Below are positions 18,340 to 45,929 of a stretch of DNA of 64,000 nucleotides, one piece after another; within the stretch, counting starts at the first letter, position 1, and each line of letters opens with the position of its first letter. The notes beneath the pieces are model-generated. The model was not told the origin of the DNA. It saw only the letters and a list, made by a program, of their open reading frames with translations, and did no database searches. The position numbers were made by a program, and so were the translations under genes. Origin of the DNA: Isurus oxyrinchus. Its lineage: Eukaryota. Location of the stretch: NCBI GenBank assembly GCA_026770705.1, contig JANJGN010000039.1, positions 8,680,001-8,744,000 on the forward strand. The letters run 5' to 3'.

Positions 18340-19080
18340 TAGTTCCTGAGGGAACATCAGTTCCTCAGGGTAATGTCCAAGACACAACGATGTTTAGCTC
18401 CATCAACAATGACCTTCTCTCCACCTTAAGGTTGGAAATGGGGATGTTCGCTGATGATTACGCAATGCTCAACTCAATTCGTCACTCCTGAGATAATAAG
18501 GTTGTCCATGGCCAAATGCAGCATGTTCAGGCTTTGGCTGAGCAGAGGGAAAGGACATTGACACCATACAAGTACCAGACAATGAATATCTCCAAAAGAG
18601 AAAATCAAACCATCGACCATCTGCATTCAATGGCATTACCATCGCCGAAAGTCGCACTAACAGCATTGTAACGCTTATCAATGACCAGAAACAGAACTGG
18701 ATTGGCCATATAAACAGAACGTGTGTTTTAACTTAAAGGTGCACTGCCTGAATTTCCTAAGTAACCTTTGACATTACAGTCCAAACCCACAACCGGAACC
18801 ATCTGGAAGAATAATGGGCAGCAGACACATGGGAACACAACGATTTGGATGTTCCCCTCCAAGCTACACACCAGCCTGTTTGAAATGATATCCCTGTTCC
18901 ATCATTGTAGTTGGATCAAATTCCAGGATCTCCCTCCTTATGAGCATATTGGCTGTACGGTTACCTGCTGCGATTCAAGAAGGGAGCTCACCACCATATT
19001 CTCAAGGGTACTTACGTCTGGGCAATGAATGCTGTGAGAACGATTGATGCTAAAAGCCCCTAAATCAATAATAATAAATA
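18340..19080 (+). mobile_element. LINE 3' fragment (CR1/L2 group)
   Basis: VPQG..INNDL..GMFADD reverse transcriptase motifs and the family tail (gctcaccacca..ttctcaaggg..gggcaatgaatgctg). Confidence 0.7.
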
Positions 19081-20213: not shown

Positions 20214-20505
20214 CAGAGCCGTGCCTCGGGTTTGGAAAATTGTGGCGACCGGGACTGGCACCGCACATTGAGGGCAGATATGGACTGCGCTGCAGTGACC
20301 TGTGAAAGGGGGTGGCCATTCCTATCCGGGTAAGTTTGAAGGAGACTGTTGAAGTGACACAAATGAGCGGCCCTATTTGCATTTAGGATTCAATGGCTAG
20401 CACGTGCAGAGACAAAGAAAATGGAGACAATATTGCTTGGATGCAAAGAAAAGACAGACAAAATAACGAGAGAATGATAAGACCTTGAAATATTCTCCGC
20501 AAAAC
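20214..20505 (+). mobile_element. Truncated left end of the same hAT element in duplication copy 1
   Basis: Paralog of 57406-57695, cut off by the CR1 ORF1 fragment. Confidence 0.6.
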
Positions 20506-20529
20506 TTCCGACATGTCCTGTGATTTCTG

Positions 20530-26260: not shown

Positions 26261-29234
26261 GATTGCTTTAAAAAAAGGCATGTTTTCTTCTTACCCAGAG
26301 GTATGTGGGTGCCTTGAACTTACTGCCCGGAAAGGCAGCAGAGGAACAAAACCCACAACCCAATTAATGTATTGATATACACCTCAAGTGCTGTAAACAG
26401 CAGGGCTACAGATTGAGTTTGAAATTGGGATGAAGCTGGACAATTCATTTTCGGCCGGTGCAGACGCCATGTTGTAATTTTCAACAATTCTACGAAAAGG
26501 TTAATGATGGGCTCCATTAGATGCAACATATGACGTTCAATTATTACATGTGGATGATCAGAGAGGGAGCACAGCAGTATGAAATACTAAAAAGATGATC
26601 AAAACAATGGAGGAGAAGTAATACATGGAGAACAGATTCAGCAACACAGAACTACCAGTGCAGAAGCATATTTGAAACTAAAAACACTGTCAAGCAAAAA
26701 GGCTTTTGAGCGTAAATGAGTACGTGCTAAAAAGCTGAACCATAGAGAACAGAATCGAAGACATTTTTTCAAGCAAATTAGGATTAATAACCATAATGAT
26801 TGTAAAATTATATTTAAAAAGGAGCAAGCTATTTCACGAGAACTTAGAAGGAAGGCTGGTCTCTACGAGATTGGATAGCCTAGAATTCAGGGCTTAAGGC
26901 AAAACTCAACAGTAAGTACAATGACAGGAAAAGCAGGAATGATAAAATGAAAGAAATAATTATGCTCGGGAATGGGTCGAAATGGAAGGAAAAATAAAGT
27001 ACACAATTAAATTATGAGCGAATATATAAAATGAAGTTAAAATGCTCTACAGACAAATAAAAGTTAAACCAGATGCAGGAGCTGGAAAATAAAGTTACAT
27101 TTGAAAAATCTTACTGCAAATGATAAAGTTACACTCCGTCTAGCGGTATTTCACTCTCTCTTTCTCTCCCCCCACCTCCCTCCTCAACAAAGGTCTACCG
27201 TCTTATGACAAGATTATTGTCGTCTCATTTCGTCCGAAGGCAAACACGATCTCACAATCCCAACAAGCATGCTGAACATGTTCAATGTCACTAACTCAGC
27301 AATTATAACCCCAGTTGTCACATGAGCCTCTCTGTGGTTTCTATTCCTGCTTGTGTTTGTCGCTAAACAAGGTGAAAACGTATTGGTGATTCCAAGTTTT
27401 GCAGCAGATTTCCCTCCCCATCACACAACACATGCGAACATATGAAGATACGAATTAGGAACAGTAGTCCACTCGGCCCCTCGTGACTTCTTCACAATTG
27501 ATAATATAATGACTGACCTGACCATATCTTCATCTCTAAATTCCCTCCTACCATTGATAAAATTTCAACCATCTTGCCTCCCAGCAATTTATCTTGTTCT
27601 GCCTTAAAATATTACTGAGAAGTTCTGCTTCCACTGGCCTTTAAGGAAGAAAACTCGAATGGTGCGTGTTTCTTTCAGTGAATAAAAAAGCCTCCTTATT
27701 TCTATCTTACGGGATTGCCCCGTCATTTTCCTTTTATGTGAAAGGAGTGGAGAAAAAATGTTACATTTATGATTAAGGCATCTACAACGTTCCCATTTAC
27801 TTCCTTTCACAACCTAGGATTCAAACTTCTGCTCTTTGAGATTTTCCTCTCCCATGTGTCTATAATTTGTCTATTAATATTATTGTTGTTCACATTAACT
27901 TTGTTGAATCCCTGCACCTGATTCAGGAATAGTTTCCATGGGATCTCTGACAGGCTGATCTATTCCTCAACTTCAATAACTGAAACATGGTTACCATTCA
28001 GCGTGTCCGCTACCTGATTAGTTTCATTGACAGGAACATCATTCTCAGTTTTGAACTGACCAACACTGCTTACGCCAACCGTGCTTTTCCTAATATAATT
28101 GTAACATATTTGCATGCTGATTCAAATATCACAAGCAGCTTTCGTACCACACTCCATCCTTGTGTATGTTCTCCTCAGTTTGACTTTAGGTGAAGAGCTA
28201 CTGAGGCGTAGGCATAGGGTGTGTGTAAGGGTGATGGGGACAATAACTTTGATGCAGCAGATGGTAATGATTGGGAATTTGCTGCTTTTAAATGTAGAAG
28301 CAGATATAGTTATGATATCAAATAAACATTGTTTGGTGGAAATTAACATGCAGGACATGGGAATAGGGCGGAGGATGGGGCTACATCTATTGCCCAGGAA
28401 CTTGCATTGATGGAAAATCCGTTTGTCTTCTTTCTCTGTCCTAGTGACTCTACAATGGTGTCTCACAACGAGCAACACGCTTTTAGTTCCTCGAGGAGAA
28501 ACTCTGCGAACATCCCTCCTTCGCCCCCTGCAATCCTTTCCTCCTGATCGTTCTGTTTCATGTTCTCCTGCACAGCCCACAACAGAAAGGTGGCCTCGGT
28601 CCTCCTGCAGAGCCCTGGACTAAAGAACTGCAACACTGCCGTCAGCGCCTTCACTCTTCCACATTGCTCCTTTTCCTTTTACAGACAATCCATACAAGGA
28701 AACTCAGATTCAGCCTCCTGCAATAAGTGCAGCTGCGGTTTCAGCTACACTGCACCACTTAAATACACCTCAAGGCCCCCTCGACGACGTTCAGCAAGCG
28801 GCCAGCGAGTGGAGCTCTGGCCTGAAGCCTTCACTCAGGTAAATGAGATGCAGCAGGAAGTGAAACGCCTTCTGCCCCAATAAGTTCAGTGAGTGATGTC
28901 ACTACCCGATTGTGTGTGAATATGAAAGCAGCACACTCTCGGAGATTAGAATAAGGACACTTCAACTCCAGCATCCTGATACTAACTCTCAGCAAATCCA
29001 CTGATAATAATGAAAAATCTCATCTTGCGGATCGTTTTAATGCTCATTCAGCCCAGTGCCATTGCTGGAGCGATGTCCCCATTGACTCACAGAGATATAT
29101 GCTTCCACATTTCTCCGAGGACTCAGCAGCCAGTATTCTTAAAGATTGATTTTTTAAAAAAATATTCATAATTGAAAATCATGTTTTCATCTGCTGAATT
29201 AAGATGACTGTGCGTGAGGCTGGAAGATTTAATA

Positions 29235-29336
29235 TTAAACAGTGGAGGCCTCTTCTTTCCGACTGAGGGCTTCCAGGTTCAACGATATATAGTCTATCTC
29301 CTCATTGTCATTCGCTAGCACTTCAGAATAGAGTCT
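29235..29336 (-). other. Duplicated ITIM exon (paralog of 30579-30704), possible alternative last exon
   Basis: Same TCATCGCAG acceptor. Reads RLYSEVLANDNEEIDYISLNLEALSRKEEASTV*, and IDYISL still fits the ITIM consensus. Confidence 0.7.
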
Positions 29337-29399
29337 CTGCGATGAATGACACACAGGGAATAATTCCGCTGTGTGTTCAAAACGAGGCGGCCTGGCGTT

Positions 29400-29555
29400 A
29401 GATGTGTGACTGCTGTGAGAGTTGGAGTATACATTATCACTCCTCCTTTCCTGTTGCTAATTTGTCACGAGCTATCCTGATGAGCGTAAGGCGAAAAGCT
29501 GTGACAGTGGGTCTATTTTAGCAGCAGTACTCCAGTCCTGTGCTACTAAATGAGC
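29400..29555 (+). mobile_element. Short Penelope-type terminal fragment with hammerhead-like core
   Basis: CTGATGA (29477-29483), GC-gtaag-GC stem, GAAA (29493-29496) and palindromic AGCT. Confidence 0.4.
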
Positions 29556-29740
29556 ATTTATTGTAAGAACCTAATTGCTAACTATTCTGCTGAGCCTATC
29601 AGATGGACAATTGCCGACGAAAAAATTATGCTTATGGTTCCAACTTGGATATTTGTATCAAAGCGACACTGAAATTGTAACTTTTTGAATAATTTCAATC
29701 TGGATTATTGCCACCAAATATAGAAAAAGTTCATTCAAAG

Positions 29741-29746
29741 TTTATT
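29741..29746 (-). promoter_or_regulatory. Candidate polyadenylation signal of the ITIM receptor gene
   Basis: TTTATT on the plus strand is AATAAA on the minus strand, about 205 nt after the stop codon. Confidence 0.35.
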
Positions 29747-29952
29747 ATAAACACATTCAATGAGCGTAGAATATATTGCAACATGAAAAAGTGCTTCAAG
29801 CTGATATACGTACAAATTTATAACCTCTCAAAAATCTTTAAGTACCACAGTTCATACAGGTCCCGTAAGTGACGAAATTCGCACTTAGTCAAAGTGTTTT
29901 GGGAACATGCAGGCGGAACAGCTTACAGAGTCTAACGCGGTGCAGTGTCCAT

Positions 29953-30036
29953 TCATTGCGGTTTATCCGAGTCAACTCTCACAGGTGCGTAGGTGACATC
30001 TTGAAACTCGCTCTTTGCTAATTCAGAACGCTTCTT
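29953..30036 (-). CDS. ITIM-bearing receptor: terminal exon with second ITIM
   Basis: tttctttccttgcag acceptor, phase 0. Encodes KKRSELAKSEFQDVTYAPVRVDSDKPQ*; VTYAPV is an ITIM. Confidence 0.75.
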   Translation of the reverse strand, partial: KKRSELAKSEFQDVTYAPVRVDSDKPQ

Positions 30037-30154
30037 CTGCAAGGAAAGAAACACAATGGCACAAGTGGGTAAGATCACCTTTCTCTCGATTCGCCTTTTA
30101 TCGACCTCATGCTCTCCTCCCTTCCTCTGGCAATCCATTCAACTTCACCCCGAT

Positions 30155-30410
30155 GTTCTCTCCCCGTCTCTCTCACTCACTTTCTCCCTCTCCCATGCTA
30201 TCTCTCGCTCTCGCTCCCCAAGCCTCATGTTCTGTCTCTGTCTCTCTCATTGATTCCCTCCCTCTCTCACTCTCACATCCTCGACACCCCACCTCCATGT
30301 TCTCTCGCTGTCTCTCTTACTCACCTTTTCCCTCTCCCACGCTCTGTCTCTGTCTCTCTCTCTCTCTCTGCGTCTCCATGTCCTCTGCGTTTTTTCTCTG
30401 TCTCTGCATC
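30155..30410. repeat. Degenerate CT-rich low-complexity tract within an intron of the ITIM receptor
   Basis: Visible directly; source of the spurious Ser/Leu-rich ORFs. Confidence 0.8.
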
Positions 30411-30578
30411 ATTTTTATTTTCTTTGTATTTCCTAGGGTCCTGCTCTATTTTCCTTTACCCCCAGCTACAAACTTTTTGACATTTCCCCCCTTTTAGTTT
30501 TCTTTCTGCCTCTTTACGCCCACTTTTTCATCACACAAATCAAGCACCCACAGAACAGAAATGTAATTTTTTCCCTAC

Positions 30579-30704
30579 TTTAGCTGGAAAGTTGGCGCCT
30601 GGTTCACAGGTGGAGGCCCCATCTTTCCAACTGAGGGCTTCCAGGTTCAACGATGCATAGTTTAACTCCCCATTGTCGTCCTCTAGCACTTCAGAATAGA
30701 ATCC
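30579..30704 (-). CDS. ITIM-bearing receptor: first ITIM exon
   Basis: TCGCAG acceptor, 126 nt, phase 0-0, GTAGGG donor. Encodes GFYSEVLEDDNGELNYASLNLEALSWKDGASTCEPGANFPAK; LNYASL fits the ITIM consensus (I/V/L/S)xYxx(L/V). Confidence 0.75.
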
Positions 30705-30949
30705 CTGCGATGAATAACACACAGGAAATAATAAAAGCAAAGGGAACAAGGTGATCGCAACAGGCGCAAGCTAAATTTAAATTCCTGAAAGCTATATGTT
30801 CTTTCCATGACACAGAGCAGTCTAATACATTGATTTGAACAACATATAATTTGGATTGAGTCATAAGGACATGACGGGAGGAATGTAACAACGAAGATGA
30901 CATTTTGCAGATTTATAATATCATTGGTTAGAGCACTGTGGGCAATTCT

Positions 30950-31300
30950 GGGGAGGCAGTGGCCTAGTGACCAAGTGCTTGGAAAGGTAATTCAGAAGCC
31001 TTGATTAACACTTACTGAATTAACTGATCAGGTTCATCCAAGTTCACTTAATAAATGTGGAAATGGAATATGGCCTCATGAAGCTACCATTGTTTGTTCT
31101 AGCAGCCCATCTGGTTCACGCATGTCCTCGAGGGAAGGAAATCTGACGCCCTCACCTGGTCTGGCCCACCTGTAAGTCCAGACCTAAAAGCAAAGTGATT
31201 GGCCCTTACCTGCCCTCTGAAATGGCCAAGCAAGCCGCTCATTTTAAGGGTGATTTCGGGAGACCTTCATAATGGCACCCACAACCCATGAAAAACTTAT
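30950..31300 (+). mobile_element. tRNA-derived SINE, probably Deu-domain (SacSINE1-like)
   Basis: A-box-like TGGCCTAGTG head, then the body cccatctggttcac..agggaaggaaatctg..cctggtctggcc..gccctctgaaatggcc..caagcc, then a LINE-derived tail. Confidence 0.65.
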
Positions 31301-32222
31301 TTCTGAAACCTAAACACCAGACTTCAGGAATGAGATAATGACCTCAGAAAAAGGGTAAAACATAAGTCCGTTCATTGGTAAATTAAGTGGACATGGGGCT
31401 TCCTTGGAGATAAAATAAACTAAAACAAATGAGTCATCGCTTCGAACTGAGTTTAACTGAGATATGTTTCCACGGCGATGACATTTTCAACATAGTCGAT
31501 AGAGGGAAGACAATATTCCCGCTAACTACTGGACCATCCTACAACAGGGAGTGGACATTATTTGGAGAATTAAATAAAACTGGAGGGCAGAAGAGCATAG
31601 ATTGTTTTTACCTTGTTTTTCATTCAGAGAGTTGTTAGAATCTGGAGCATATCATCTGATAACGTGATTGAAGGCAATCCCGTGCAATGTTTCAAAAAAT
31701 ATTTTGAATGAGGAATTTACAGTGATATGGGCACGGTTCTAGCATGGAGGAGTAAGTGAGGCTGCTAGCCATTGGACGATGGGCAGAACGGCCTCCTCCT
31801 TGGCGGTTCGCTTCAACAATGGTGCGATCATGCACTGACTTATTGTTTCATTTCTTCTACCGAATGTTCCCTTTGAATTTCACTCACCCTTCCTCAGCCT
31901 GCCCCCTGTTCTTTTGACCCTCCCTATGTCACTCTCTAAGTCACTCTCGCGCCTCCTGTCTTTCATTGTGTTTCCAAATTTCAGGCTTTTCATCTTTTTT
32001 CTCGCTCTTGCTCGCTCTCCCACCCTTTTCCTCTGTCTCAATATTCATTCTCTCTTCCTTGATCTGCAATTCCGGGGTTCCCTGTTCACTTTTTGCCCCC
32101 TATACCTCACTCTCGACCTCCCACTCAGAATATCATACCTCCCACTCAGAATATCATATGTTTGCGTCCATTTTTCCGTGAGTTGGCTGAGAATAATAGC
32201 AATATTCAAAATAGGTGCTTAC

Positions 32223-32260
32223 GTTCATCTCCAGGTTGGAGGAACCACTCTGGTTAAGAT
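32223..32260 (-). CDS. ITIM-bearing receptor: cytoplasmic exon
   Basis: tctttccttttcag acceptor, 38 nt, phase 1-0, GTAAGC donor. Encodes (Y)LNQSGSSNLEMN. Confidence 0.68.
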
Positions 32261-32447
32261 CTGAAAAGGAAAGACAAGTGCATTTCTATTCAATTGTTGC
32301 ATGCTTTCATGGAGGGTAAATGGTCTAGCAAGTTCCTTGTCTATTGACGTTAAGCGGTGTTACAGATGTGTTGTTGTTTATAGGAATGACGTGAATTTCA
32401 ATTCCATTTCAAACACATGACTTGCAGGCAGCCAAACACTCCTGCTC

Positions 32448-32653
32448 TGCGGATACTGGTAATCTGAAACAAGAATAGAAAATCCTTGACAAACACTGAG
32501 CAGGTCTGACAGTATCCAAGGAGAGAAAGAAAAAGCGAACCTTTCGAATGCGTGTGGCTCTTTCCAGAGCTCTGAAGAAGAGACATACTGACTCCAAACG
32601 TTAACTGTCCCTTTCTCTCCACAGATGCTGTCAGACCTGCAGAGTCTTTTCCA
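32448..32653. mobile_element. Older palindromic Penelope-type element, related subfamily
   Basis: Imperfect inverted arms (gcaggtctgacag / ctgtcagacctgc) around cagagctctg; contains CTGAAGA..stem..aaacgtt. Confidence 0.6.
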
Positions 32654-33037
32654 CTTTTAAATAGATCCCGTATGTTTGATGTGCCAGCCCACGAATAATT
32701 CGATTCCCATATCATCCAGTTTTCCTGTAACCACGACTTTAATAGAACAGAATACTGGGTGTGTAGTATAACACTGTAAAATGGATGCAGTTTGTTTGAT
32801 GACCCATGAAAAATTTGATCCCCAAAGACCCATGTTTCTTGCAACCAAGTGATCAACAATCTTTAGAAATGTTTCTAATTCTATACTAGGTCTACCAAAT
32901 AAATTCTATTTAAATATAGAAGGGAGAATATTGGAAATAACTACATAAGCCATTCAGACAACCGTGACGGACAGTGTCAGAAAGAGCAATGATCCTTGAT
33001 CAAGAAATACAGTCAATGTCAACATTACTATACTTAC

Positions 33038-33090
33038 ACAGGAGATCACCATCTTGCTGATTTGCCATTCCACTTGCAGACGCTGTACAC
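33038..33090 (-). CDS. ITIM-bearing receptor: cytoplasmic exon
   Basis: tttctttcattttaaag acceptor, 53 nt, phase 2-1, GTAAGT donor. Encodes CTASASGMANQQDGDLL(Y). Confidence 0.65.
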
Positions 33091-33262
33091 CTTTAAAATG
33101 AAAGAAAGTTACTGATTTGTTAGAAGTATTCCCCCCAAAATCATGTTTATTTTCCAATGCACAAGTTTAAGAAAATATTTAACTTTTACTGAATTGAGTA
33201 ATATCGTGTGGTACATTTTGCTCACAACTATAAATACTGGAGAACTAAAGCAATGTCATTAC

Positions 33263-33290
33263 CTCTCAATATTTAGTCTTTTTCTCTTTC
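33263..33290 (-). CDS. ITIM-bearing receptor: juxtamembrane basic micro-exon
   Basis: ttttgctttattgcag acceptor, 28 nt, phase 1-2, AG|GTAATG donor. Encodes (R)KRKRLNIE(R), a stop-transfer cluster. Confidence 0.68.
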
Positions 33291-34294
33291 CTGCAATAAA
33301 GCAAAAAGTGGGAAAAATGTAAAGAACTTGATAAAGTTTTCCAAATGCTCAATATTCTATGGATTTAATGCATTGAAAGGTTTTATGAATTTGCTCCTAA
33401 TGTAATGAGGATATATGACTAATACACATGCTATGGTGTAGGAAACCATGAAATTAACCGATAATATCCACCAACCCAGTTTCCTCTACTTGCGTCTCAG
33501 TATCAATAGCTTCCACTTACAAATTCAGTGCCTGAAGGCAGTAAAATATCCCGTGTGCTCCAGAGCACTTGGGCTACACACATAAATAGCGTTGAAACAC
33601 GTAATTTAGTGTTGGTGTTTATAATCCAGATCTTGACACCTCACGTGATCTAATTGCCTCTTTCTAGCCTTCCCACTTATCACTCTCTCTATTACCCCTT
33701 CGCTCTTGAACACATCAGGTCCGCCTTTATTAATGGTGTTATCAGTTTTGACAAGAAAAGTATAAAAAAACAGAGAGAAATAAAGAGAAGACTTCGAGTT
33801 CTCGCCTTTCTTTGGGTGATGGAAGTGCTCCTGAATTGTTTTACAGAAGGAATGGATCAAAAGCGTTCTCGAAGTGATGCATTTTGTAGATGGCTTTAAC
33901 TTTTCGGAAGCTTCCAGTTAGCTAGTTAAGTTCTGAAAACTTTCGCTGAAGCACCACCATCAGTGATGAAGGCGAATGGCATGGAGTGGATTCTGTAGTA
34001 GGCACAGCTGTGATATGTGGCTGTGCGACTAGGAATGTTTCAGTCTTCCGATTGTTGAAAATGGAACGTGGCACACCAACGTGAAACGACCGGATGAATA
34101 GGGGGAACAGTTTGACATCTGTATATTGGCGAATGGAACAAAGAGCTATCTGCAGTAGGGAAGGTCAAACAGCAGGATCAGTGTGCAAGATGAGTCATAT
34201 TCGACTCGAAATGTTATCTCTGTTTCTCTCTCCGCAGGTGAAATCACAAAAGGCCGTGAAGAGGAACAAAAGTGATGATTTGTATTAGGGTGTA

Positions 34295-34840
34295 GGACAG
34301 AACACAAAAAAGGAGCAGAGGTAGGCCATTCGGCCCCTCTAGCCACCCGAGCCATTAAATAATATTATGGATGATTAGCGCCAGGCCTCAACTCCTCTTT
34401 CGTGCCAGCTCCTCATAGCCCTCAACTCCCCAATATTTCTAAAATCTATCTACATCATCATTAAATACTTTCTACGGTTTAGACTCCACAACTCACTAGG
34501 CTAGAGAATTCCAAACATTCACTACCCTCTGAGAGAGGAAATCCACATGCAGCTCAGTTGTAATTGAGTGGCCCCTTATGCTGTAACTATGTCTCCTAGT
34601 TTGAGATTCTTCCACGAGTGGAAACATCTTCTCAACATTGAAACTGTCAAGCCCCCTCAAAATCTTGCAGGTCTCAATAAGATCACCCCTCATTCTTCTA
34701 AACTCGAATAAATAAAGGCTTAAACTCTTTAGCCGTTCTCGATGAGTCAACACTTCGATCCCAGGAATCAGCCCATTGAATCTCTTTTGAACTGCCTCCA
34801 ATGCCAGTGTATTTATTCATGAATAAAGGGGACAAAAGAT
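34295..34840 (-). mobile_element. CR1 LINE 3' end
   Basis: ORF 34496-34801 reads EAVQKRF..RERLKSLSLY..EFRRMRGDLIETCKILRGLD..SQRVVNVWNSL, followed by the tail gggccgaatggcctac. Confidence 0.88.
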
Positions 34841-35719
34841 TACTAAGTCCACTAACAATGCAACTATGCTATCGCCTCCTCTGCAAAACAGCGAAGTGAA
34901 GCTGTTGCTAGGTCCCACTCAGTGCCCAGAGCAACATGTTTAATTTGAAGGAGTTAAGTGGAGTGGAAGCAAATGTTGTTTAACGTCACGGCGATTTGTT
35001 GGTCCTCCACACAAGGAGAAAGAATGGGGAGGGCTCACAGGCCGCCCTGGTGGCGAATTGACCTACAGAGTGATTGGACGTCCATGGCGAAACGGAAGCA
35101 GAGCCAGAAACTGTTGAAGAGACGGCGGGCATCAGCAGAGCAATGGATGTAGGTAGGGAGTGATGTATAAGAAATAAATAGAATCGAGATAGGAATAATT
35201 AAGCACAGTTGGTTAGGAGTAGTTTGAAACAGTAGGATGAAACCAGATACGTCGCCTTTTTAGATTGGGGTAGAGGTAGATACTGACTATTTAGGGAGGT
35301 TGGGCCATGTGATTGGAAGGCATGGAGGGGAGATCTGCACAGGAGATCAGGTCAGTGACGGCCCTAGATCGGGTGGCTTCATTTTATGAAGGAGTGCCAT
35401 GATCCAGGGGGCGGTAGAAGGCAGTAGTGGAGAGTTGGCCTTTCAACTCTGATATCGATATCCTATCCTGATACAAGAAAATTTGTTACGAGCTTGGCCT
35501 AAATTTTTGACTTTTGGTTTGGAGCTGACAGACCGGAGTACTGCTTGTTCAGCTTAATATCCCTGCAGAGAAATTGAAAAAGCTGCTGTCAATACAACAC
35601 TTCCGAATGAGAAGCTCAATGCAATATTCGGCCAAGGGAAGGTGTCAGATGTAAGTTTGTATGTCCATTTGAATGTTGAGGTCAAAATATATTGAGGCTT
35701 CTTGTCAAATTTCTCCTTT

Positions 35720-36110
35720 CAACTCATCCTCCCATGGGATGTCGTTTTCCCTGGCAATGCCTGAGTTTGTTGCTCATGCCTCATTGCTCTTGAACCGAAT
35801 GTCTAAGCAATTTCAGAGGACATTTAAGCGTTAGCAATATTGCTGTGTGCAGGAGTCACATGTAGGCGAGATCAGGCAACGATGGCCGAGTTGCTTCCCT
35901 AAAGAGCATTACTGGACCATTTTAAAATATATACATATATAAATTGTATTCGATTGTAGATTCCTGGATAGCAGTACTGACACTGACTTAAAATTCTAAA
36001 ATTATTAATAGGTTTACCTCAAACTCCAGCAGCTGCCGTGGTGGAATCTGAGGCCGTGCCACAAGCCTGGGCGTGTGGTTTATGACCCCTGCCGCAAATT
36101 ACACTCTACG
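35720..36110 (-). mobile_element. Decayed SINE of the same type
   Basis: Reverse complement of the body at 31100-31250 (atttcagagg..gagtcacatgtaggc..cttccctaaag), with a B-box-like region near 36040. Confidence 0.55.
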
Positions 36111-36486
36111 CCGGTTTACCAGGAGTTGAAGCGGTGGCCGTTTCTGAAGACAAAGCCAGAGAGGGCAGGTGAGAGCAAACCGTAAGTACCCAAGGAGTGG
36201 GGACATTCGATGGGGTGAGACGAAAGGGAAGGGGCGTGGAATCGAGACGGTCACTGTTGTCCGCCAGTAATGAGGGTGATGTTCCAGTTGCTTTACTCAC
36301 ATCCTCTGCATGAAAGTGACCTTTCAATTAAGACAAGGCCTCATTCCTCAACATGTAGTCATCCATAGCTGCTGACAATTTTAATGCTGCAGTTGAGTTT
36401 AGGGTTGTTTGCAGGTTCCCGCCAACGTTTCCTCCTTTTTTCATGAAAAATGGTAGTTATTTTTTTTTTTCTTGACGAACACTTAC

Positions 36487-36582
36487 TTCTTCTGGCGAAC
36501 AAGCACGCCGTCATTGCCACAAACGTTGCCAGGATTATTTCGACTGCACTCCCCAGGACAGCAATTAGAGGGAAAGTGGTCC
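36487..36582 (-). CDS. ITIM-bearing type I membrane receptor: transmembrane exon
   Basis: CCAG acceptor, 96 nt, phase 1-1, GTAAGT donor. Encodes TTFPLIAVLGSAVEIILATFVAMTACLFARR, a hydrophobic helix followed by basic residues. Confidence 0.72.
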
Positions 36583-36892
36583 CTGGCCCGGGAGAGCAAT
36601 AAAACGTTGAACATGTGTAAGATTAAATACACAACCATGTGTGTGTTAATGTAATTAAGTACATCAATAGCTTTGGAAATTCTTCCCAGCTGATTGTGTG
36701 CTAAACGCCCCTTAGCCAGTGTAAAATCGTGCACCCTAACAGAATCCATTGGACATTTTTTCCGAACAACTTAATAAAATCAGTAGCAGGGGATGTTAAA
36801 CGGGCAGCGTTTAAAATTTCTTCCACGATTTTCCTCTTGGCTGCCTGACCTGGCGGTCTTAACGCCCACATGATAAAGGCTAAACCCACGAG

Positions 36893-37168
36893 AACTACCA
36901 TCTAGAAGGACAAGGGCAGCAGATAGATGGGAACACCGCCACCTGGAATTTCCCCTCCAAGTCACTCACCATCCTGACTGGGAAATATATCGGCCGTTCC
37001 TTCACTATCATCGGGTCAAAAACCTGGAACTCCCTCCTAACACCACACCAGCGGGAGTGCAACGGCTCAAGAAGGCAGCTCACCACCACCTTCTCAAGGG
37101 CAACTAGAGATGGGCAATAAATGCTGTGCCGACACAGCGAAGCCCACATACCCTGAATGAATGAAAAA
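36893..37168 (+). mobile_element. Well-preserved LINE 3' tail
   Basis: ccatctagaaggacaagggcagcaga..caagaaggcagctcaccaccaccttctcaagggcaa..gggcaataaatgctg; same tail as at about 26000-26250 and 62200-62480. Confidence 0.75.
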
Positions 37169-37604
37169 ACAATATTGACGGCAAATGTTCTGGGCTGGTT
37201 TTACTGTTTTTTTTTAATAACACACAGTCCCTAGACAACACAAAGTACTTCGTCTTCTCTTAATTCCGTGATGCAAATTATCAGTCTTGATCCTAGGATA
37301 TTCCTGATAAAGCAAGTGAAGGCAAGAAGCCACGTTATTTAGAAATGAACCAAAACTGGGGCTCAATCAGAATGTCTGCCTTAGATTGTGAAAGCATATA
37401 CAATAGCAGATGCTTCTGGAACTGTTCAGAAAAAGCCAAGTTTTAATTAGATGTTTTTGACAACAACACTTGCACACACACACACAAAAAAGGGACAAAA
37501 TGGTTTGGGACAGTGAAATGGCATGCTGTAGAGTCACGGTGAATTGTACTGTTGGAGTTGGGACAAATTAATTTCAGTGAAATTTTAATGAAATTTCATT
37601 TCAC

Positions 37605-38013
37605 TGCTAGGACGGGACAACAATTTCAATGTCTTTTGTAACAGAGCACCACAGAACCTGTTGTGTAAGCAGCCACATGGAAGTAAGCGATAATAGCGCC
37701 CTTGATGAACTCCAACATTATCGAGCATTACCAAGGCGTAAAGGTTAACAATCTGTGCAGAGACCATGAGAAGGGAAGGTCAGAGACCCGTCGGGCGAGA
37801 ACCAGGTCCCAGATGTACTTTTTAAATCGGAATAGAACTTAGAATACTGGAAGGAAACGAACATCCCCACTGCTTTCAAACCTCCACTGGAGGTGTCTGA
37901 ATGAGTTTGATAAAGCAACAGTCCATTTCTCACGGGTTGGGAGAACAGGCAGTTTGCAAGGAGCACTGTAGAGTCGAAGATAGCTGTGCCTGGGCTGATT
38001 TTGTGGTGAATTC
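37605..38013 (-). pseudogene. Decayed immunoglobulin V-like domain exon upstream of the TM exon
   Basis: ccccttcag acceptor, phase 1. B-strand-like STVLLANCLFSQP, C-strand-like HLQWRFES in another frame, and E/F-strand-like ALVMLDNVGVHQGRYYR (CGC where Cys TGC is expected). The possible phase-1 donor at 37604 gives 409 nt, not a multiple of 3. Confidence 0.5.
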
Positions 38014-38797
38014 CTGAAGGGGTATCATGGCATGCAGAAAATGGAGGAGTGCCTACGTGTGTGAGGAGGCGATTCAAATGCATCCACTAATAGGCAATGC
38101 TCCTTGGTGAACCTTAGTCCATGAGACTGCTCAGACTTGAATTGATGCGGCCAATTATCAGGAGCACGTGTCCTGTTTTGCGGGCATGTAGAGTCCGTTG
38201 GATGATATGCAAGGGGAATGGAAGGGGACAAAGGGAATTCTGCCAGTCCAGTGAGCATTATGGAAATGAGTCAAATAACGGTTTGTGGCGAATCAACCTG
38301 ACTGCTTACTCTCTGCAGTCCATGCAAAACGAACAGTAAGTAAAACGGATAATGAGACACAATGTCCCCAGTTGACGACATCAAATACATTTGGAGATGT
38401 CGACTGGGTTGCAACTAATTTATATTTAAAAAATTAAATTTATATCAGCGAGCGTGTCTTCAAGGTACTAGGGCTATGAAACGTTCATTAGTTGTGACTT
38501 GAGTATTATGTGCATTTCTGGTAACCTCTTTACAGAAAAGATGCAATTCCATTAGACATGGTACAGAGGAAATATAACGAGGATATTTCCAGACCTGGAC
38601 AATTGCAACAATGAAGAAAGACTGGATAGGCTGGAGTCGTTCTTCTTGCAAGAGAGGAGGCTGAGGGGAGATTACATTGAAATATACAGAATTGTGAGCA
38701 GCCTGGATCGAATGGATGTGACGGACCTATTTACTTCAACCAGTGACTAGGGGAATTGGGTTTAACGGGGTTGTTAGGAATTTTAGAGCAGAGAGTG

Positions 38798-39914: not shown

Positions 39915-40785
39915 TTGGTCAACAGGAAGATATAGATGGGATGATCAAATGGGCAGATAAGTGGGCGATGGTATTTAACCCTGAAAAATGTGAGGTGATA
40001 CACTTTGGAAGGAGCAATTTGACGAGGAAGTATTCAATGAATGGCATGGCACTAGGAGGTTCTGAGAAAAAATGGACGTTGGCATCTGTGTCCATATATT
40101 TCTGAAGATGGAGGGCATGTTAGTGGGGTGGGGAAAAGGACATATGGGACACCTGCACTTATCAATCGAGGCAGAGATTACGAAAGTAGGGTGGTAATGC
40201 TGAAGTTGTTTAGAACCTTGTTGAGGCCACAGCTGGAGTGTTGTTTGCAGTTCTGGTCGACACATTATAGGAAGGATGTGATTGCACTGGAGGGGGTGCT
40301 GAGGATATTCATCAGGATGTTGCCTGGGATGAAACAATTAAGTTGTGAAGAGAGGTTGGATAGAGTTGGGTTGTTTTCGTTGGAGCAGAGAAGACTGAGG
40401 GGTGACCTGAAAGAGGTGTACAAGTTTATGAGGGGCGTGGACAGGCTGGATAGGGAGCAGCTGTTCCCCTTATTAGAAGGGTCAGTCTTGAGGGGACACA
40501 ATTTCAAAATGGTGGGCAGGAGGTTTAGGGGGGATGCGAGGAAAGCCTTTTTACCCAGAGGGTGGTGAAGGTCTGGAAGATGCTGCCTGGGAAGATGTTG
40601 TATGCGGGTTGCCTCACATCCTTTAAAAAGTAACTGGATGAGCACCAGGCACGTCATAACATTCTTGACTATGGGCCAAATGGTGGCAAATGGGATTAGT
40701 TGGAAAGTCAGGTGTTTCTCACGTGTCGGTGCAGACTCGATAGGCTGAAGTGCCTTTTCTGCGCTTCCTGGTTCTGTGATTCTGT
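39915..40785 (+). mobile_element. CR1 LINE 3' end (relatively young)
   Basis: ORF 40128-40568 reads INRGRDYESRVVMLKLFRTLLRPQLECCLQFWS..ERLDRVGLFSLEQRRLRGDL; ends in ttctgtga repeats. Confidence 0.9.
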
Positions 40786-41161: not shown

Positions 41162-41662
41162 NNNNNNNNNNNNNNNNNNNNNNNNNNNNNNNNNNNNNNN
41201 NNNNNNNNNNNNNNNNNNNNNNNNNNNNNNNNNNNNNNNNNNNNNNNNNNNNNNNNNNNNNNNNNNNNNNNNNNNNNNNNNNNNNNNNNNNNNNNNNNNN
41301 NNNNNNNNNNNNNNNNNNNNNNNNNNNNNNNNNNNNNNNNNNNNNNNNNNNNNNNNNNNNNNNNNNNNNNNNNNNNNNNNNNNNNNNNNNNNNNNNNNNN
41401 NNNNNNNNNNNNNNNNNNNNNNNNNNNNNNNNNNNNNNNNNNNNNNNNNNNNNNNNNNNNNNNTCTCTANNNNNNNNNNNNNNNNNNNNNNNNNNNNNNN
41501 NNNNNNNNNNNNNNNNNNNNNNNNNNNNNNNNNNNNNNNNNNNNNNNNNNNNNNNNNNNNNNNNNNNNNNNNNNNNNNNNNNNNNNNNNNNNNNNNNNNN
41601 NNNNNNNNNNNNNNNNNNNNNNNNNNNNNNNNNNNNNNNNNNNNNNNNNNNNNNNNNNNNNN
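41162..41662. other. Assembly gap (N run with a 6-nt island)
   Basis: Visible directly. Confidence 0.99.
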
Positions 41663-41930: not shown

Positions 41931-44900
41931 ATTAATTCTCCCGGCCGTTCGACATGTGAGTGCGCTGCAAAAAAAAAAGTGCCAGTGTGCTATCACGTGA
42001 GAGGTTAGATCAGGTCTATCCTTGCACGATCGATTGCCAATTTCTGCATAAAATGTCTTTTGAGGCGGAATAAATTAACTTTGCATTCGCTTCCTTGTCT
42101 TTAATGTGCTTGACTCTGCTCTCCACACATGCTGAAATCACTGGATGATTCCTCCATTTGGTTGTGCCGATGGTTTGTTATTTTGTTCAGAATCATGTTT
42201 TCAGACGTATCCATTCATGTGGCAGGGATGTGGTTAGATCGGCCACAACTTGTTGCTCCACCCAAATTGCCCTTGAAGATGTGGAGGTGTCCTATCTTCC
42301 TGAAATTGTCTGTTTCATCTTATTGACGTCAGGGGCATTCCATCAGTACCGAGAAAGAAGCGTGTTAAGCTCAAGGTGATTTCAGATGACTGAGGATTCC
42401 AACTCAGGACAAATATGTTCTTCCGCCGTGGGACTGCTTTTTAGCACTAACTTTTGGAAATTAAAGGCCTTGGACGATTCAAATCTCCTTCCTGTGCCTC
42501 GGCCTTTTCAGCACTCTTTTGAGCCTCGAAGTGGTTTTCGATTTGATGGACAGTTTGGTGCCAGGCTGAGAGACTGGCAGCATTCTCCTCCCGTGCCCTG
42601 TTGTTAAGGCCTCATTGCTTTACGGAGACCTGCAGTGCAGCCTTACACCTTTCTCTTTGGCCGCCCTTTGGACGAGGAATGGTAAGTGACAGAGGCAGGT
42701 ACGGAAAGGCACCCCTTTCCTGAAAAATGTGCCCATTGACTGCCCCAAATCTGCCGCATTTGTGCAGGATTTTGACTGGGGGCCAACACAGGCTTGCCCC
42801 TTTCCCCAATCCTCCATCCCCACAGGGTTTTTCGCCAGAAGCCGGCCTGTGAACCCCCCATTTAAGTACCAGAATTCTGGAGCGCCGGAAGTATGCTTCA
42901 TATGGTGCAGGCACACCACGTTGTTTTTAGCAAGGTCGCATCAGGAATCCATGTACTGTGATCCAGCTTGCAATCTCTGAGTTTGGCCTTCAGATTTCAG
43001 ACATCCTGTAGTGGAGCTTCCTGTGCTCACCGAGTGTGGCGTTTGGTACGTAGGCATTTTCCAGATGAACCGCATGAACTACCCAGGGAACCGGGGCTGT
43101 AATGAACATATTTTCAATGTCAGTCATGCTGCACTTTGCAAGATTGTCGGTTTTGCGGATTTTGCCTTGCCAAGAACCGTTGGAAATGTTTTACGGGCAG
43201 TGAAGTTGTAAAGTTTTCATGAACTTTCTAAGAGGCCGAAAGGTTATGCAAGTCTCGCGCTGATATGAAAGTGATATAAAAAAAACAGTGCCTGGCAGGC
43301 CTTGATCTTCCATCTGCGGGAAAATCCGTGTTTTATTTGCAGAAGTCAGTGAGTGAAACTTGCCAAATGCCGAGCTAGTTTTTGTCAGGCGATGGGAAAT
43401 TTTCCCATCCAGTTAGTGTTCTTGGATTGCATGCTGCCAAGTTAGCAAAACTTCCGTAAAGAACAGAGGAGTGCGTTGTTCAAAGCGACTGTGGTATCTT
43501 GGAGCACGTGACCAGATTTGATGCAGCATCTCTATCCTCAGATATATTGTCAATCGAAGACATTCTGAGTTTGCAGCAAAGCGCTCAGAACGCAGCTGAA
43601 TGTCTCCGGATCCTGAACTATGAGTGTGCATTGGTCCGCGAATAAGACATTCCTCTGTAGCTTTCCAGTAACCTCTGTGCAAGGATTTAATTTTGGCTCT
43701 TTGGAAAGGCTGCCTGTGGTCCTGAAATATATGTGTAATCCTGTGTCAAGCGCTTTGACCGCATGCTTGGAGAATGACTGACAAATGTATGAAAAACAGA
43801 GCTGGGTTGCACATTAAAGTGTATTAAACAGCCTTATTTGGCGCCGCAAGTGACATGAAATAGGTTCACATTGACGACCCACTTTGCAAAAAGAGAGAAT
43901 TACACTGATCGTCTGTTCAGTTCTGTCGCATAATATTGGCTGAGTTGAAAAGTTTATTGACCAATAAGGGAGAGTAGGGTCATGAGCGTTTAAGTGTATG
44001 ATGTGCGGAAAGTGGCGCAAAGGGCCGGCGGAAGACGCTGATTGGCGGAGAGCGGGGCTGAGGCCACGATCAGATAAACCATGAGTTTTCCGAGTTGCAG
44101 AACATGCTCAAGGGGCCGAATGACCAACTGCCATTAAATACTCTGGTTTTGGTGGGTGTTTGAAATGCAGACCACACCAAAGCCGGAGGCGCCGTCGATT
44201 CGGGTTCATTGTAATCAGTGCATCCATGTGCTAATGATTGTCTGCAGAAGACGTTTGATGGTTAAGAGTTAAATGTTAAGAGTGGAACAGCCGCCGAGCA
44301 ATGTAGTCTATATATCCCATTCTTCTATTACAAAAAAAGCATTTTTCATTCATGTCAACCATCTCTCTGGATGCAGTATGTGAGAGGTTGAGCAGGAGCA
44401 TTGCATGGCGTGGGGAATCGTTACTGAGGGGGTATGGGGTCGGATTGTCTTCAACACATTATTTTGAAATATTTTGGTTGAGAAAAGAAAAGCCTACAGC
44501 ATACAATTTCTATTGCTCATCAGGTCACCACCAACACCAGCCTTCCCGGTCCTATGGTTACGTTTATAATTTCCAGGCAGAATGGTGCAAATTTATGTGC
44601 AACCACCCACAATGTAGGCCAAGAATCTGACCGAAATGTCAGTGCCCAAGGAATCCACGGAAAGATCTGGGCAGCGTATGAGTTCGCTCTGGAAGATTTA
44701 ATGAGAAAGACATCCATCAGACATGTGCCCAGTTTCAGCAAAGACTTGGTCCGGAATCACAAAACAGTGATGAACATTTACAATTGCCCCACTTCTTCTC
44801 GTGGCGGTTCAGGCTGATTGCGTTCTCTCGAATCATTTTGATATAAATTAGTAACGATTTGATTCCCAACATCGCCCTGTGGGTCAATCATTTCCCGCCG

Positions 44901-45859
44901 TGACTATCCAGTATGGGATCTACCCGTTGCTCATTAAAATATAGCCCCTTCAATTGTATTCCAATGTTGGCCGTTTCAGTTCGAAACGGTTCCTTTCAGA
45001 AGGAGAGCAACTGACGTAACCTGTTTGTTCAATGACTGAAACTAATTGATTTCTTTAGGGGACATGAATGCCCTCCTGGCGATTTAGCTGCTGTCTACTT
45101 AACAGTTCCTCTGAATGTCACATTTCATCTTTTCCAACAGGCTGGTGTATCTGTTTCAACGAGAGTTAGCGCTTCTCACCGAAGATATAATTTGCTGTAC
45201 TTCATCAGATACGGGCCATTTACAAACCCATTTTCGAAGCTCTCGTTTTCCGATGTACGTTTACTAAAATGCCCTCGGATGAACAATATAAATTTCTGTC
45301 CTTCTTTCAATTCATCAATGAGGGCAACGCTGGCAAGGCCAGAATTTATTGTCCAACTATAATTCCCCTTGTGAAGTGGGTGGTGAGCTGCTACGGTCTT
45401 TGTGGTGTTGTTACATTCACGTTATTATTAGCAGGGGTTGGGGGTTTGTGGTCCTTTAATTTGACACGGAGACAGTGAAGAAACGGCGATATTTTTGAGA
45501 ACCAGGGCGATGAGGGGCTGGGAGAGGAACCTTCAGCATGTGGCATTCCCATGATTATTTTACCTTTGTCTTTCTAGATCGCAGCGGCCGTGAGTATGAT
45601 TACTTAAATAAAGGGCTTCATGTTATCCACAGTTAACAGATTTTCTCTGTTCCCTGCTACGAATGCTGTCGCGCCAGTTTTACCCTGGTGCTCCAGATTA
45701 ATTAGTGTGGCAACTCCTTCCGAATCGCCTGTGATTTTGACGTGTTTCTCTTATTTTCCTGAAATGAATTTAAAGAAGAAGAGGATTTCTACCTTTCAGC
45801 TCACACGTTCATTCCATGTTGTGCATCCATCTCTGCAGGAAAGACATCTCCACATGAAG

Positions 45860-45929
45860 ATGGGAGAACTGATACTTCGGCAGATAGAAGCCATTTACTA
45901 TCCTATTCTCGCGGCTATTGGTGTTCCTG
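45860..45929 (+). CDS. Class A GPCR, GPR139/GPR142-like, intact copy: coding exon 1
   Basis: ATG at 45860 (in-frame alternative at 45854) reads MGELILRQIEAIYYPILAAIGVP, the first half of TM1, then G|GTAAGA phase-1 donor at 45930. It joins exon 2 as G|TT (Val), restoring the TM1 GxPxN motif (GVPVN). Confidence 0.88.

What the first reader, a model, noticed from the sequence alone, without database searches (positions are those of the whole stretch)
29953..36582. Hidden multi-exon gene for a two-ITIM inhibitory membrane receptor between the GPCR duplicates
Seen: six minus-strand exons (36582-36487, 33290-33263, 33090-33038, 32260-32223, 30704-30579, 30036-29953), all with canonical AG/GT sites. 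Their phases chain exactly (1-1, 1-2, 2-1, 1-0, 0-0, 0-stop) into one 425-nt open frame. The product is TM helix, RRRKRKR, DLLYLNQ, GFYSEV, ELNYASL and DVTYAPV-stop. Established: (I/V/L/S)xYxx(L/V) ITIMs recruit SHP-1/SHP-2 in Siglec, CD300, LILR, SIRP and NITR-type receptors; YxN and YxxQ are Grb2 and STAT3 docking consensus motifs, and YLNQ fits both. Inference: a lineage-specific inhibitory immune receptor that ORF-based annotation would miss.
Basis: partly seen in the sequence, partly recalled or inferred. Interest (0 to 1): 0.85.

Follow-up and report, generated by a model that had tools for sequence, protein, structure and literature searches.

The report
Shark inhibitory receptor gene, tail half
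The six exons are real and encode the membrane anchor and inhibitory signalling tail of a little-known shark immune-type receptor family, but the outer ligand-binding half of the gene is nowhere in the 64 kb examined, so this copy may be a truncated leftover.

Summary
The six minus-strand exons have canonical splice sites and chaining phases and give 425 nt of open frame. They are not chance. They match, in order, the last 143 residues of an NCBI-annotated basking-shark protein (XP_078390326.1, "IGSF1-like", 371 aa). That protein has a signal peptide, two Ig domains, a TM helix and a tail. Spliced contigs from a roughly 90%-identical paralogue carry three of the five predicted junctions at the predicted places.

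Two canonical ITIMs are present (LNYASL, VTYAPV). The YLNQ motif is specific to this copy. The stop lies eight codons after VTYAPV, not directly after it.

No signal-peptide or Ig exon was found in the window, including the 27 kb upstream. No contig from this locus itself was seen. The differences from its relatives are almost all amino-acid replacements.

Most likely this is the intact TM and tail half of a family member that is a 5'-truncated copy (about 0.5). Alternatively its 5' exons lie outside the window or in the N stretch (about 0.35). It is a new member of a known kind, of moderate interest. The scan has noted other ITIM and LILR-like receptor loci on other DNA of this genome.

The parts
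36487..36582 (-). Exon 1, phase 1-1: transmembrane helix, with a glutamate in mid-helix, then the start of the basic stop-transfer run.
   Evidence: Splice sites and phase. Hydropathy maximum 2.32. Matches P0003 residues 228-266, phmmer E 3e-10; tblastn 72% identity. P0003 has alanine where this copy has glutamate.
33263..33290 (-). Exon 2, 28 nt, phase 1-2: basic juxtamembrane stretch.
   Evidence: Both split codons at its ends give arginine, the residue P0003 has at those places. It is too short for a significant score of its own (phmmer E 5.7, in the right place).
33038..33090 (-). Exon 3, 53 nt, phase 2-1.
   Evidence: 16 of its 17 whole codons are identical to P0003; phmmer E 4.1e-6. The joint 32260|33038 is in contigs of runs X1 and X2.
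32223..32260 (-). Exon 4, 38 nt, phase 1-0. The split codon with exon 3 gives the Y of YLNQ.
   Evidence: 10 of 12 residues identical to P0003. Joints to exon 3 and exon 5 are in contigs of X1 and X2. P0003 has G where this copy has Y.
30579..30704 (-). Exon 5, 126 nt, phase 0-0: the YSEV motif and the first canonical ITIM (LNYASL).
   Evidence: 68% identity to P0003 over 41 of 42 residues; phmmer E 1.5e-12. Contigs of X1 and X2 lie on it with 10 of 110 and 12 of 119 letters different.
29953..30036 (-). Exon 6, phase 0: second canonical ITIM (VTYAPV), eight more codons, then the stop at 29955-29953.
   Evidence: Matches the C-terminus of P0003 to its last residue (tblastn 71% identity; phmmer E 3.5e-8). 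The joint to exon 5 is in one X2 contig.
29741..29746 (-). AATAAA polyadenylation signal, 209 nt after the stop.
   Evidence: A pattern match only; no 3' end data.
29242..29364 (-). Stray partial copy of exon 5 with about 28 nt of its upstream intron. It ends in an in-frame stop and lies downstream of the gene's poly(A) signal.
   Evidence: blastn 87.8% over 123 nt. Codon table: 12 replacements, 1 stop and 1 synonymous change in 34 codons. Matches P0003 residues 303-334, E 7.1e-9. No contig lay on it.

Best explanation
The six exons are the genuine transmembrane and cytoplasmic-tail exons of one member of a shark multigene family of type I receptors. The annotated relative (XP_078390326.1, basking shark) has a signal peptide, two C2-type Ig domains, this TM helix and this tail. 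In a complete member the mechanism is inferred from the ITIM paradigm (LILRB, KIR-L, FCRL, PECAM-1): ligand binding brings the tail near Src-family kinases, the ITIM tyrosines are phosphorylated, and the SH2 domains of SHP-1, SHP-2 or SHIP dock and damp ITAM-driven activation. The copy in this window has an intact frame, intact splice sites, the family's own stop position and a poly(A) signal. It has no leader or Ig exons within the 64 kb. I therefore read it as a 5'-truncated partial copy: a gene fragment or young pseudogene left among transposon insertions and a segmental duplication.

Shown: the exon structure, the homology, the splice junctions in a transcribed paralogue, and the absence of ectodomain exons in the window. 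Inferred: the inhibitory signalling and the non-functional status.
For: - Homology: exon 5 alone finds P0003 (68% identity, one stretch covering 1-41 of 42 residues). P0003 is XP_078390326.1, with Pfam Ig_2 (32.8 bits, cut-off 27) and Ig_3 (29.6 bits, just under cut-off 30).
- Collinearity: P0003 residues 228-371 match exons 1 to 6 in order, down to the same last residue. The split codons at the exon 1/2 and 2/3 junctions give the arginines that P0003 has.
- Junctions: contigs of 729 nt (X1) and 733 nt (X2) carry joint 32260|33038 exactly. They carry 30700|32222 and 30036|30582 with three replaced letters each, which equals the predicted exon 4/5 and 5/6 borders in a paralogue about 10% different. 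These contigs run on for about 365-400 nt upstream of the TM and exon 2 part, so the paralogue has an ectodomain.
- Truncation: P0003 residues 1-227 match nothing below E 0.3 in 2233 six-frame open stretches and nothing below E 1.8 by tblastn.
- Truncation: no leader-like stretch scored 30 or more.
- Truncation: 0 of 25 upstream minus-strand open stretches of 70 aa or more have an Ig family in Pfam.
- Truncation: the other introns are 0.17-3.2 kb, while the upstream 27 kb holds transposon-like ORFs and the edge of a segmental duplication at 42891.
- Truncation: a stray partial exon 5 lies downstream.
- Relaxed constraint: the 7 listed differences from the transcribed paralogue fall in 6 codons, all replacements.
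- Expression: no contig at or near 100% identity was listed on the exons in any of the 4 runs.
Against: - The copy is fully intact: 141 codons are open, all ten splice sites are canonical, the stop is conserved, and both ITIMs are canonical. P0003's second motif ends in M instead. For a dead fragment about 8-10% diverged from the only paralogue seen, this would be unlikely unless the truncation is recent or a closer source copy exists.
- Shark introns can be long. The window ends 27.4 kb upstream of exon 1.
- 495 N at 41162-41662 cannot be read.
- An unchecked scan note (s1-898336) places a three-exon 'secreted cysteine-rich peptide' gene 11.9 kb beyond the window's end. Its strand is unknown, and it could be leader plus Ig exons.
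- The four runs are small sets of contigs (48-116 million letters), and contigs drop rare transcripts, so no contig from this locus is weak evidence.
- Three upstream open stretches of 70 aa or more (49146-49355, 48929-49150, 42646-42861) were not put through Pfam.
- X1 and X2 are RNA only by the tool's guess. A processed retrocopy in DNA would give the same joints.
Confidence: 0.5

Rival explanations
1. This is a complete, working inhibitory receptor gene. Its leader and Ig exons lie more than 27 kb upstream, beyond the window's end or in the unread N stretch. The intron before the TM exon would have been stretched by transposon insertions and the roughly 15-17 kb duplicated GPCR segment.
For: - The frame, splice sites, stop and poly(A) signal are intact.
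- The ITIM tyrosines and the YSEV motif are kept in all four copies compared.
- The duplicated segment 42891-57699 sits exactly where that intron would be.
- Scan note s1-898336 places a three-exon secreted Cys-rich gene 11.9 kb past the window. P0003's first Ig domain is itself cysteine-rich.
Against: - An intron of more than 27 kb, holding an opposite-strand GPCR gene, contrasts with 0.17-3.2 kb for the other five introns.
- No contig from this locus was seen, while a paralogue was seen in 2 of 4 runs.
- Differences from relatives are nearly all replacements.
Confidence: 0.35
2. This is an Ig-less signalling chain. A short leader exon would splice onto the TM exon, giving a small membrane protein with an acidic residue in its TM helix and an ITIM tail. 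It would pair with receptors that carry a basic TM residue, as an inhibitory mirror image of DAP12 or FcR-gamma.
For: A glutamate sits in mid-helix where P0003 has alanine. The tail is intact while no ectodomain is found.
Against: - Scanning 16 kb upstream for an ATG-started hydrophobic mini-exon with a phase-1 GTRAG donor gave 1 candidate. It lies inside a transposon-like ORF at 40657-40618.
- No transcript data exist for this locus.
- One substitution in a possibly decaying copy explains the glutamate more simply.
Confidence: 0.05
3. This is a chance chain of splice-like sites and open frames in non-coding DNA.
For: Two ITIM-pattern matches in 141 residues have P of about 0.036 by chance alone. 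AG and GT dinucleotides are common.
Against: The exons are collinear with P0003 at E down to 1.5e-12. Three junctions are reproduced in spliced contigs of a paralogue.
Confidence: 0.01

Closest known systems
XP_078390326.1, 'immunoglobulin superfamily member 1-like' of Cetorhinus maximus (P0003; automatic NCBI name, no paper found)
   Same: The TM helix and the whole tail are collinear with the six exons, about 67-94% identical per exon. It has the same last residue, the same YSEV motif and both ITIM-position tyrosines.
   Different: It has a signal peptide and two Ig domains that have no counterpart in the window. It has alanine where the window copy has the TM glutamate, G where the window has the Y of YLNQ, and M at +3 of the last motif.
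LILRB / KIR-L / FCRL type inhibitory receptors of the leukocyte receptor complex and FcR families (mammals), and teleost LITRs
   Same: This applies to the family, via P0003: type I topology, C2-type Ig domains, an uncharged-to-basic stop-transfer, and a tail with two ITIMs split over several small exons. The best but non-significant PDB sequence matches are LILRB4 (E 0.016) and FCRL4 (E 0.019). Language-model look-alikes are IGSF1, TARM1, LILRA2/B3 and FCRL5 clusters. That LILRB ITIMs recruit SHP-1, SHP-2 or SHIP is stated in the abstract of PMC4825776 (search listing).
   Different: There is no significant sequence similarity to any of them (0 PDB matches at E 0.01 or below). The tail has no detectable relative other than P0003 in 1.84 billion representatives. 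Synteny with the LRC or the FcR locus could not be tested. The window copy has no Ig exons.
PECAM-1 (recalled, not from a call)
   Same: Many small cytoplasmic exons and a YSEV-type tyrosine motif beside an ITIM. This is recalled from memory only.
   Different: It has six Ig domains and is an adhesion molecule. No sequence similarity was found in any search here.
DAP12 / FcR-gamma transmembrane signalling chains
   Same: An acidic residue inside the TM helix, and no (or no found) sizeable ectodomain.
   Different: Those chains carry ITAMs, not ITIMs, and have their own leader exon and a cysteine-bearing stub. Neither was found here.

Membership tests
Shark two-Ig ITIM receptor family typified by XP_078390326.1 | TM plus tail homologous and collinear, with the same C-terminus | tested here: met
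   phmmer E 3e-10 (exon 1), 4.1e-6 (exon 3), 1.5e-12 (exon 5) and 3.5e-8 (exon 6). Exons 2 and 4 are weak but in place. tblastn agrees.
Shark two-Ig ITIM receptor family typified by XP_078390326.1 | Signal peptide and two Ig domains (Pfam Ig_3, Ig_2) encoded upstream of the TM exon | tested here: not met
   P0003 residues 1-227 have no match below E 0.3 in six frames of the window. No leader match was found. 0 of 25 upstream open stretches have an Ig family. Limits: 495 N, and the window ends 27.4 kb upstream.
Shark two-Ig ITIM receptor family typified by XP_078390326.1 | Same exon borders in transcripts | tested here: met
   3 of the 5 predicted junctions are seen in spliced contigs of a roughly 90%-identical paralogue. 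Exon 3/4 and 4/5 are in X1 and X2; exon 5/6 is in X2. Exon 1 lay outside the stretch laid. Exon 2 (28 nt) drew no contig.
ITIM-bearing inhibitory Ig-superfamily receptors (LILRB, KIR-L, FCRL, LITR, SIRP, CD300, Siglec type) | At least one (S/I/V/L)xYxx(I/V/L) motif in a cytoplasmic tail after a TM helix without a basic residue | tested here: met
   LNYASL and VTYAPV, with the tyrosines 42 residues apart. The TM helix has no K or R but has one E.
ITIM-bearing inhibitory Ig-superfamily receptors (LILRB, KIR-L, FCRL, LITR, SIRP, CD300, Siglec type) | Extracellular ligand-binding Ig domain(s) in the same gene | tested here: not met
   None was found in the window.
ITIM-bearing inhibitory Ig-superfamily receptors (LILRB, KIR-L, FCRL, LITR, SIRP, CD300, Siglec type) | Phosphotyrosine-dependent binding of SHP-1, SHP-2 or SHIP, and inhibition of ITAM signalling | not testable with these tools
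   This needs phosphopeptide pull-down or cell assays.
ITIM-bearing inhibitory Ig-superfamily receptors (LILRB, KIR-L, FCRL, LITR, SIRP, CD300, Siglec type) | Expression of this locus, in leukocytes | tested here: inconclusive
   4 small contig sets were laid. Only paralogue contigs were seen (90-96% alike on the exons), and none was listed at or near identity. The tissue is unknown.
Leukocyte receptor complex (LILR/KIR) or FcR/FCRL family proper | Significant sequence or fold similarity of the Ig domains, and conserved synteny | tested here: inconclusive
   The best PDB matches are LILRB4 at E 0.016 and FCRL4 at E 0.019, neither significant. The AlphaFold model of P0003 was too poor to search with (pLDDT 46.6).
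NITR (novel immune-type receptors) | N-terminal V-type Ig domain with a J-like motif | tested here: not met
   The family's full-length member has Ig_2 and Ig_3. Its only V-set hit is V-set_CD47 at E 0.04, below the cut-off. The window has no Ig exon at all.

The most novel reading that the evidence does not exclude
The Ig-less copy is not dead. It would be used as a small ITIM-bearing transmembrane chain whose mid-membrane glutamate pairs it with receptors that carry a basic TM residue. That would make it an inhibitory counterpart of DAP12 or FcR-gamma, born by truncation of a two-Ig receptor gene.
Probability: 0.04. Interest if true: 0.8.

Novelty: new member of a known kind. Interest (0 to 1): 0.33.

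Why it matters
A 2014 survey stated that no FcRL genes and no LRC-type receptors with only C2 domains could be found in shark genomes, and that these families arose with bony fish (PMC4016189, passages read). A 2024 single-cell study does list automatically named fcgr1a-like, fcrl3 and fcrl5 genes in bamboo shark B cells (PMC11372145, one passage read).

The family this tail belongs to has two C2-type Ig domains, a TM helix and a double-ITIM tail. It has no relative detectable by sequence other than one basking-shark protein. It is another unstudied candidate for early inhibitory receptors of jawed vertebrates.

The window copy itself adds mainly a gene structure: six small TM and tail exons, three junctions confirmed through a paralogue, and an example of how such families shed partial copies. 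If the copy is complete or used without Ig domains, it would be worth more.

My four paper searches listed no paper describing this family. Supplements were not consulted.

Tried and rejected
- Ig exons by pattern: a crude C..W..YxC pattern over all open stretches of 45 aa or more on both strands gave 1 match, at 4253-4483 on the plus strand. It is not Ig-like and lies far away.
- The other first-stage note, 'decayed Ig ectodomain' at 36487-38013 (s1-897069): the 113-aa open stretch 37748-38086 has 0 Pfam families. Nothing in 36583-38100 matches P0003's Ig domains; the best is E 40. I reject it on this evidence.
- Other hits of the exon 5 search: 5 proteins reached E 0.001 or better. Two scored better than P0003: P0001 at 8.9e-12 with 7 stretches, and P0002 at 9.5e-10 with 6 stretches. 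P0004 and P0005 also matched. All four are long repeat proteins in which a short repeat unit matches the same 16-31 residues of the query many times. I set them aside as repeat-driven. Only P0003 matches once, end to end.
- Relatives of P0003: the search restricted to residues 229-371 (458 candidates) and the search with the whole protein (3663 candidates) each found only P0003 itself. This covers proteins of 204-649 aa only.
- Structure route: a single-sequence AlphaFold model of P0003 had mean pLDDT 46.6, so no fold search was run.
Intron positions and dN/dS against P0003 could therefore not be obtained.
- RNA of this locus: the look-up of sequencing runs listed 5 runs, all with share 0.00. 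Laying 4 of the 5 gave paralogue contigs only.
- A leader exon for an Ig-less chain: 1 weak candidate in 16 kb, inside a transposon-like ORF.
- PMC4701786 was opened for 'shark'. All four hits were the surname Sharkey, so it is irrelevant.

Full report
**Observation**

I re-read the minus strand of 29,800-36,700 and checked each claimed exon with a script that kept the exons apart.
- All six exons follow an AG. The first five are followed by GT, in good donor contexts (GTAAGT, GTAATG, GTAAGT, GTAAGC, GTAGGG).
- Every acceptor has a pyrimidine-rich run before it.
- Exon 1 is a hydrophobic helix (Kyte-Doolittle maximum 2.32 over 19 residues) with one glutamate in the middle. A run of arginines and lysines follows, and it continues through exon 2.
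- Exon 5 holds YSEV and LNYASL. Exon 6 holds VTYAPV.
Eight codons follow VTYAPV before the stop. The first tyrosine motif has glycine at -2, so it is not a canonical ITIM.
- An AATAAA lies 209 nt after the stop.

**Is it more than chance?**

The ITIM pattern alone is weak evidence. It occurs 188 times in 89,494 six-frame residues of the window, so two in 141 residues has P of about 0.036. The decisive evidence is homology and RNA.

- Exon 5 alone (42 residues) was scored against 1.84 billion representative proteins and gave five proteins at E 0.001 or better.
- Four of them are long repeat proteins in which a short repeat matches the same part of the query 4-7 times. Two of these have better E-values than the true hit. 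I set them aside as repeat-driven.
- The fifth, P0003, matches once, over residues 1-41 of 42, at 68% identity, near its C-terminus.
- P0003 is XP_078390326.1, 'immunoglobulin superfamily member 1-like' of Cetorhinus maximus, 371 aa.
- It has a leader and two Ig domains: Pfam Ig_2 at 32.8 bits (above its cut-off) and Ig_3 at 29.6 bits (just under its cut-off of 30). A TM helix and a tail follow.
- Compared with the unspliced window, its residues 228-371 hit exons 1, 3, 5 and 6 with phmmer E 3e-10, 4.1e-6, 1.5e-12 and 3.5e-8. Exons 4 and 2 score weakly but in the right places.
- The hits are in order, and the match ends at the protein's last residue, just before the window's stop.
- The split codons at the exon 1/2 and 2/3 junctions give arginine, which is what P0003 has there.

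*RNA.*
- No listed run held the stretch (5 runs, share 0.00). I laid 4 of them on 29,200-35,190.
- One 729-nt contig of X1 and one 733-nt contig of X2 (the same sample) lie on exons 3, 4 and 5, and in X2 also on exon 6.
- Their joints are 32260|33038 (exactly the predicted exon 3/4 border), 30700|32222 and 30036|30582.
- The last two each have three replaced letters. Counted through, they are the predicted exon 4/5 and 5/6 borders in a sequence that differs at those letters.
- These contigs differ from the window at 10 of 110 and 12 of 119 letters in exon 5. They therefore come from a paralogue, not from this locus.
- They continue for some 365-400 nt beyond the TM exon, so that paralogue has an ectodomain.
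- Caveats. The runs are 'RNA' only by the tool's guess. A retrocopy in DNA would look the same. The run flagged as probably DNA (X4) shows no such joint.

**What is missing**

A receptor needs a leader and an ectodomain, and neither was found.
- P0003 residues 1-227 match nothing below E 0.3 among 2233 open stretches in six frames and nothing below E 1.8 by tblastn.
- Its first 22 residues have no ungapped match scoring 30 or more.
- A crude Ig pattern finds nothing relevant.
- 0 of 25 upstream minus-strand open stretches of 70 aa or more have an Ig family in Pfam. Three further stretches were not scanned.
- The companion first-stage note of a 'decayed Ig ectodomain' at 36,487-38,013 finds no support in these tests.
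- The 6 kb upstream of exon 1 holds transposon-like ORFs and the element of another scan note (s1-897035, unchecked).
- Beyond that come 495 N (41,162-41,662). At 42,891 lies the edge of a segmental duplication (3,728-20,506 against 42,891-57,699, about 80% identical). It carries an intact rhodopsin-type GPCR ORF on the other strand.
- A 123-nt partial copy of exon 5 with its acceptor lies downstream of the poly(A) signal and ends in a stop.

**Constraint**
- The seven itemised differences from the transcribed paralogue fall in six codons, and all six change the residue.
- Against the stray exon 5 copy there are 12 replacements, one stop and one synonymous change in 34 codons.
- At exon 5 codons 12, 14 and 26, P0003, the paralogue and the stray copy agree with each other against the window copy.
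- The samples are small and one comparator is dead. Still, there is no sign of purifying selection outside the motif cores.
- On the other side, the whole 141-codon frame, ten splice sites and the stop are intact, and both ITIMs are canonical. P0003's last motif ends in M instead.

**Reading**

That these are true TM and tail exons of a shark receptor family is, in my view, near certain. Whether this copy is a working gene is open.
- I put about 0.5 on a 5'-truncated copy, meaning a fragment or young pseudogene.
- I put about 0.35 on a complete gene whose 5' exons lie outside the window or in the N stretch. The unchecked note s1-898336 describes a three-exon 'secreted cysteine-rich peptide' gene 11.9 kb beyond the window's end. 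It is a concrete candidate, since P0003's first Ig domain is cysteine-rich.
- I put about 0.05 on an Ig-less chain that uses the TM glutamate.

The inhibitory mechanism is inferred from established ITIM biology, not shown. It would run from Src-kinase phosphorylation of the ITIM tyrosines to SHP-1, SHP-2 or SHIP docking and then to damping of ITAM signals. The Grb2/STAT3 reading of YLNQ is weak. Its tyrosine comes from the exon 3/4 split codon, and P0003 has glycine there.

**Comparison with known families**
- P0003 has no relative of 204-649 aa at E 0.001 or better in 5.8 billion clusters, either for its tail or as a whole.
- It has no PDB match at E 0.01 or better.
- Its best weak matches are LILRB4 (E 0.016) and FCRL4 (E 0.019).
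- Its language-model look-alikes are IGSF1, TARM1, LILR and FCRL clusters. These are leads, not membership.
- So the family works like LILRB or FCRL-type inhibitory receptors. Membership of the LRC or FcR families proper is untested.

**Literature**
- PMC4016189 (passages read) states that no FcRL and no C2-only LRC homologues were found in sharks.
- PMC11372145 (one passage read) lists auto-named fcrl and fcgr-like genes expressed in bamboo shark B cells.
- Four searches listed no paper on this family. Supplements were not consulted.
- The scan's own notes record several other ITIM receptor families and two LILR-like loci elsewhere in this genome. I did not check them.

**Verdict**

This is a new member of a known kind, of moderate interest.

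Noticed in passing
window 3728-20506 and 42891-57699: A segmental duplication in four collinear blocks, about 78-82% identical. Copy B holds an intact 314-aa rhodopsin-family GPCR ORF (52756-53700 +, Pfam 7tm_1 E 1.8e-19). Copy A holds only a 117-aa open remnant (15867-16220 +, 26.9 bits, below the cut-off). The receptor tail exons lie in the unduplicated DNA between the two copies.
   Followed up: partly
window 29242-29364 (-): A stray 123-nt copy of exon 5 with its acceptor and an ITIM-like IDYISL. It ends in a stop and lies about 590 nt beyond the gene's stop codon. No other exon copies lie nearby.
   Followed up: yes
window 34496-34801 (-) and 40128-40568 (+): Two open stretches share a similar motif-rich sequence and look like C-terminal pieces of one retrotransposon family. 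One sits inside intron 1. Pfam gave nothing significant for the one scanned. Naming them as CR1/L2-like is my recollection only.
   Followed up: no
window 30100-30500: A GA-rich simple repeat in the intron between exons 5 and 6. It produces long spurious plus-strand ORFs and very deep but meaningless contig depth in X2 and X4.
   Followed up: no
window 41162-41463 and 41470-41662: Two N runs of 302 and 193 letters, flanked on the high side by low-complexity repeat. An exon hidden there cannot be excluded.
   Followed up: no
window 36541-36543 (-), mid-helix codon of exon 1: A glutamate in the middle of the TM helix, where the basking-shark homologue has alanine. This is unusual for an ITIM-tailed chain.
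   Followed up: partly
11.9 kb beyond the window's high end (scan note s1-898336): A first-stage note describes a three-exon gene for a small secreted cysteine-rich peptide. By position and description it could be the missing leader and Ig exons, or those of the next family member. I could not read that DNA.
   Followed up: no
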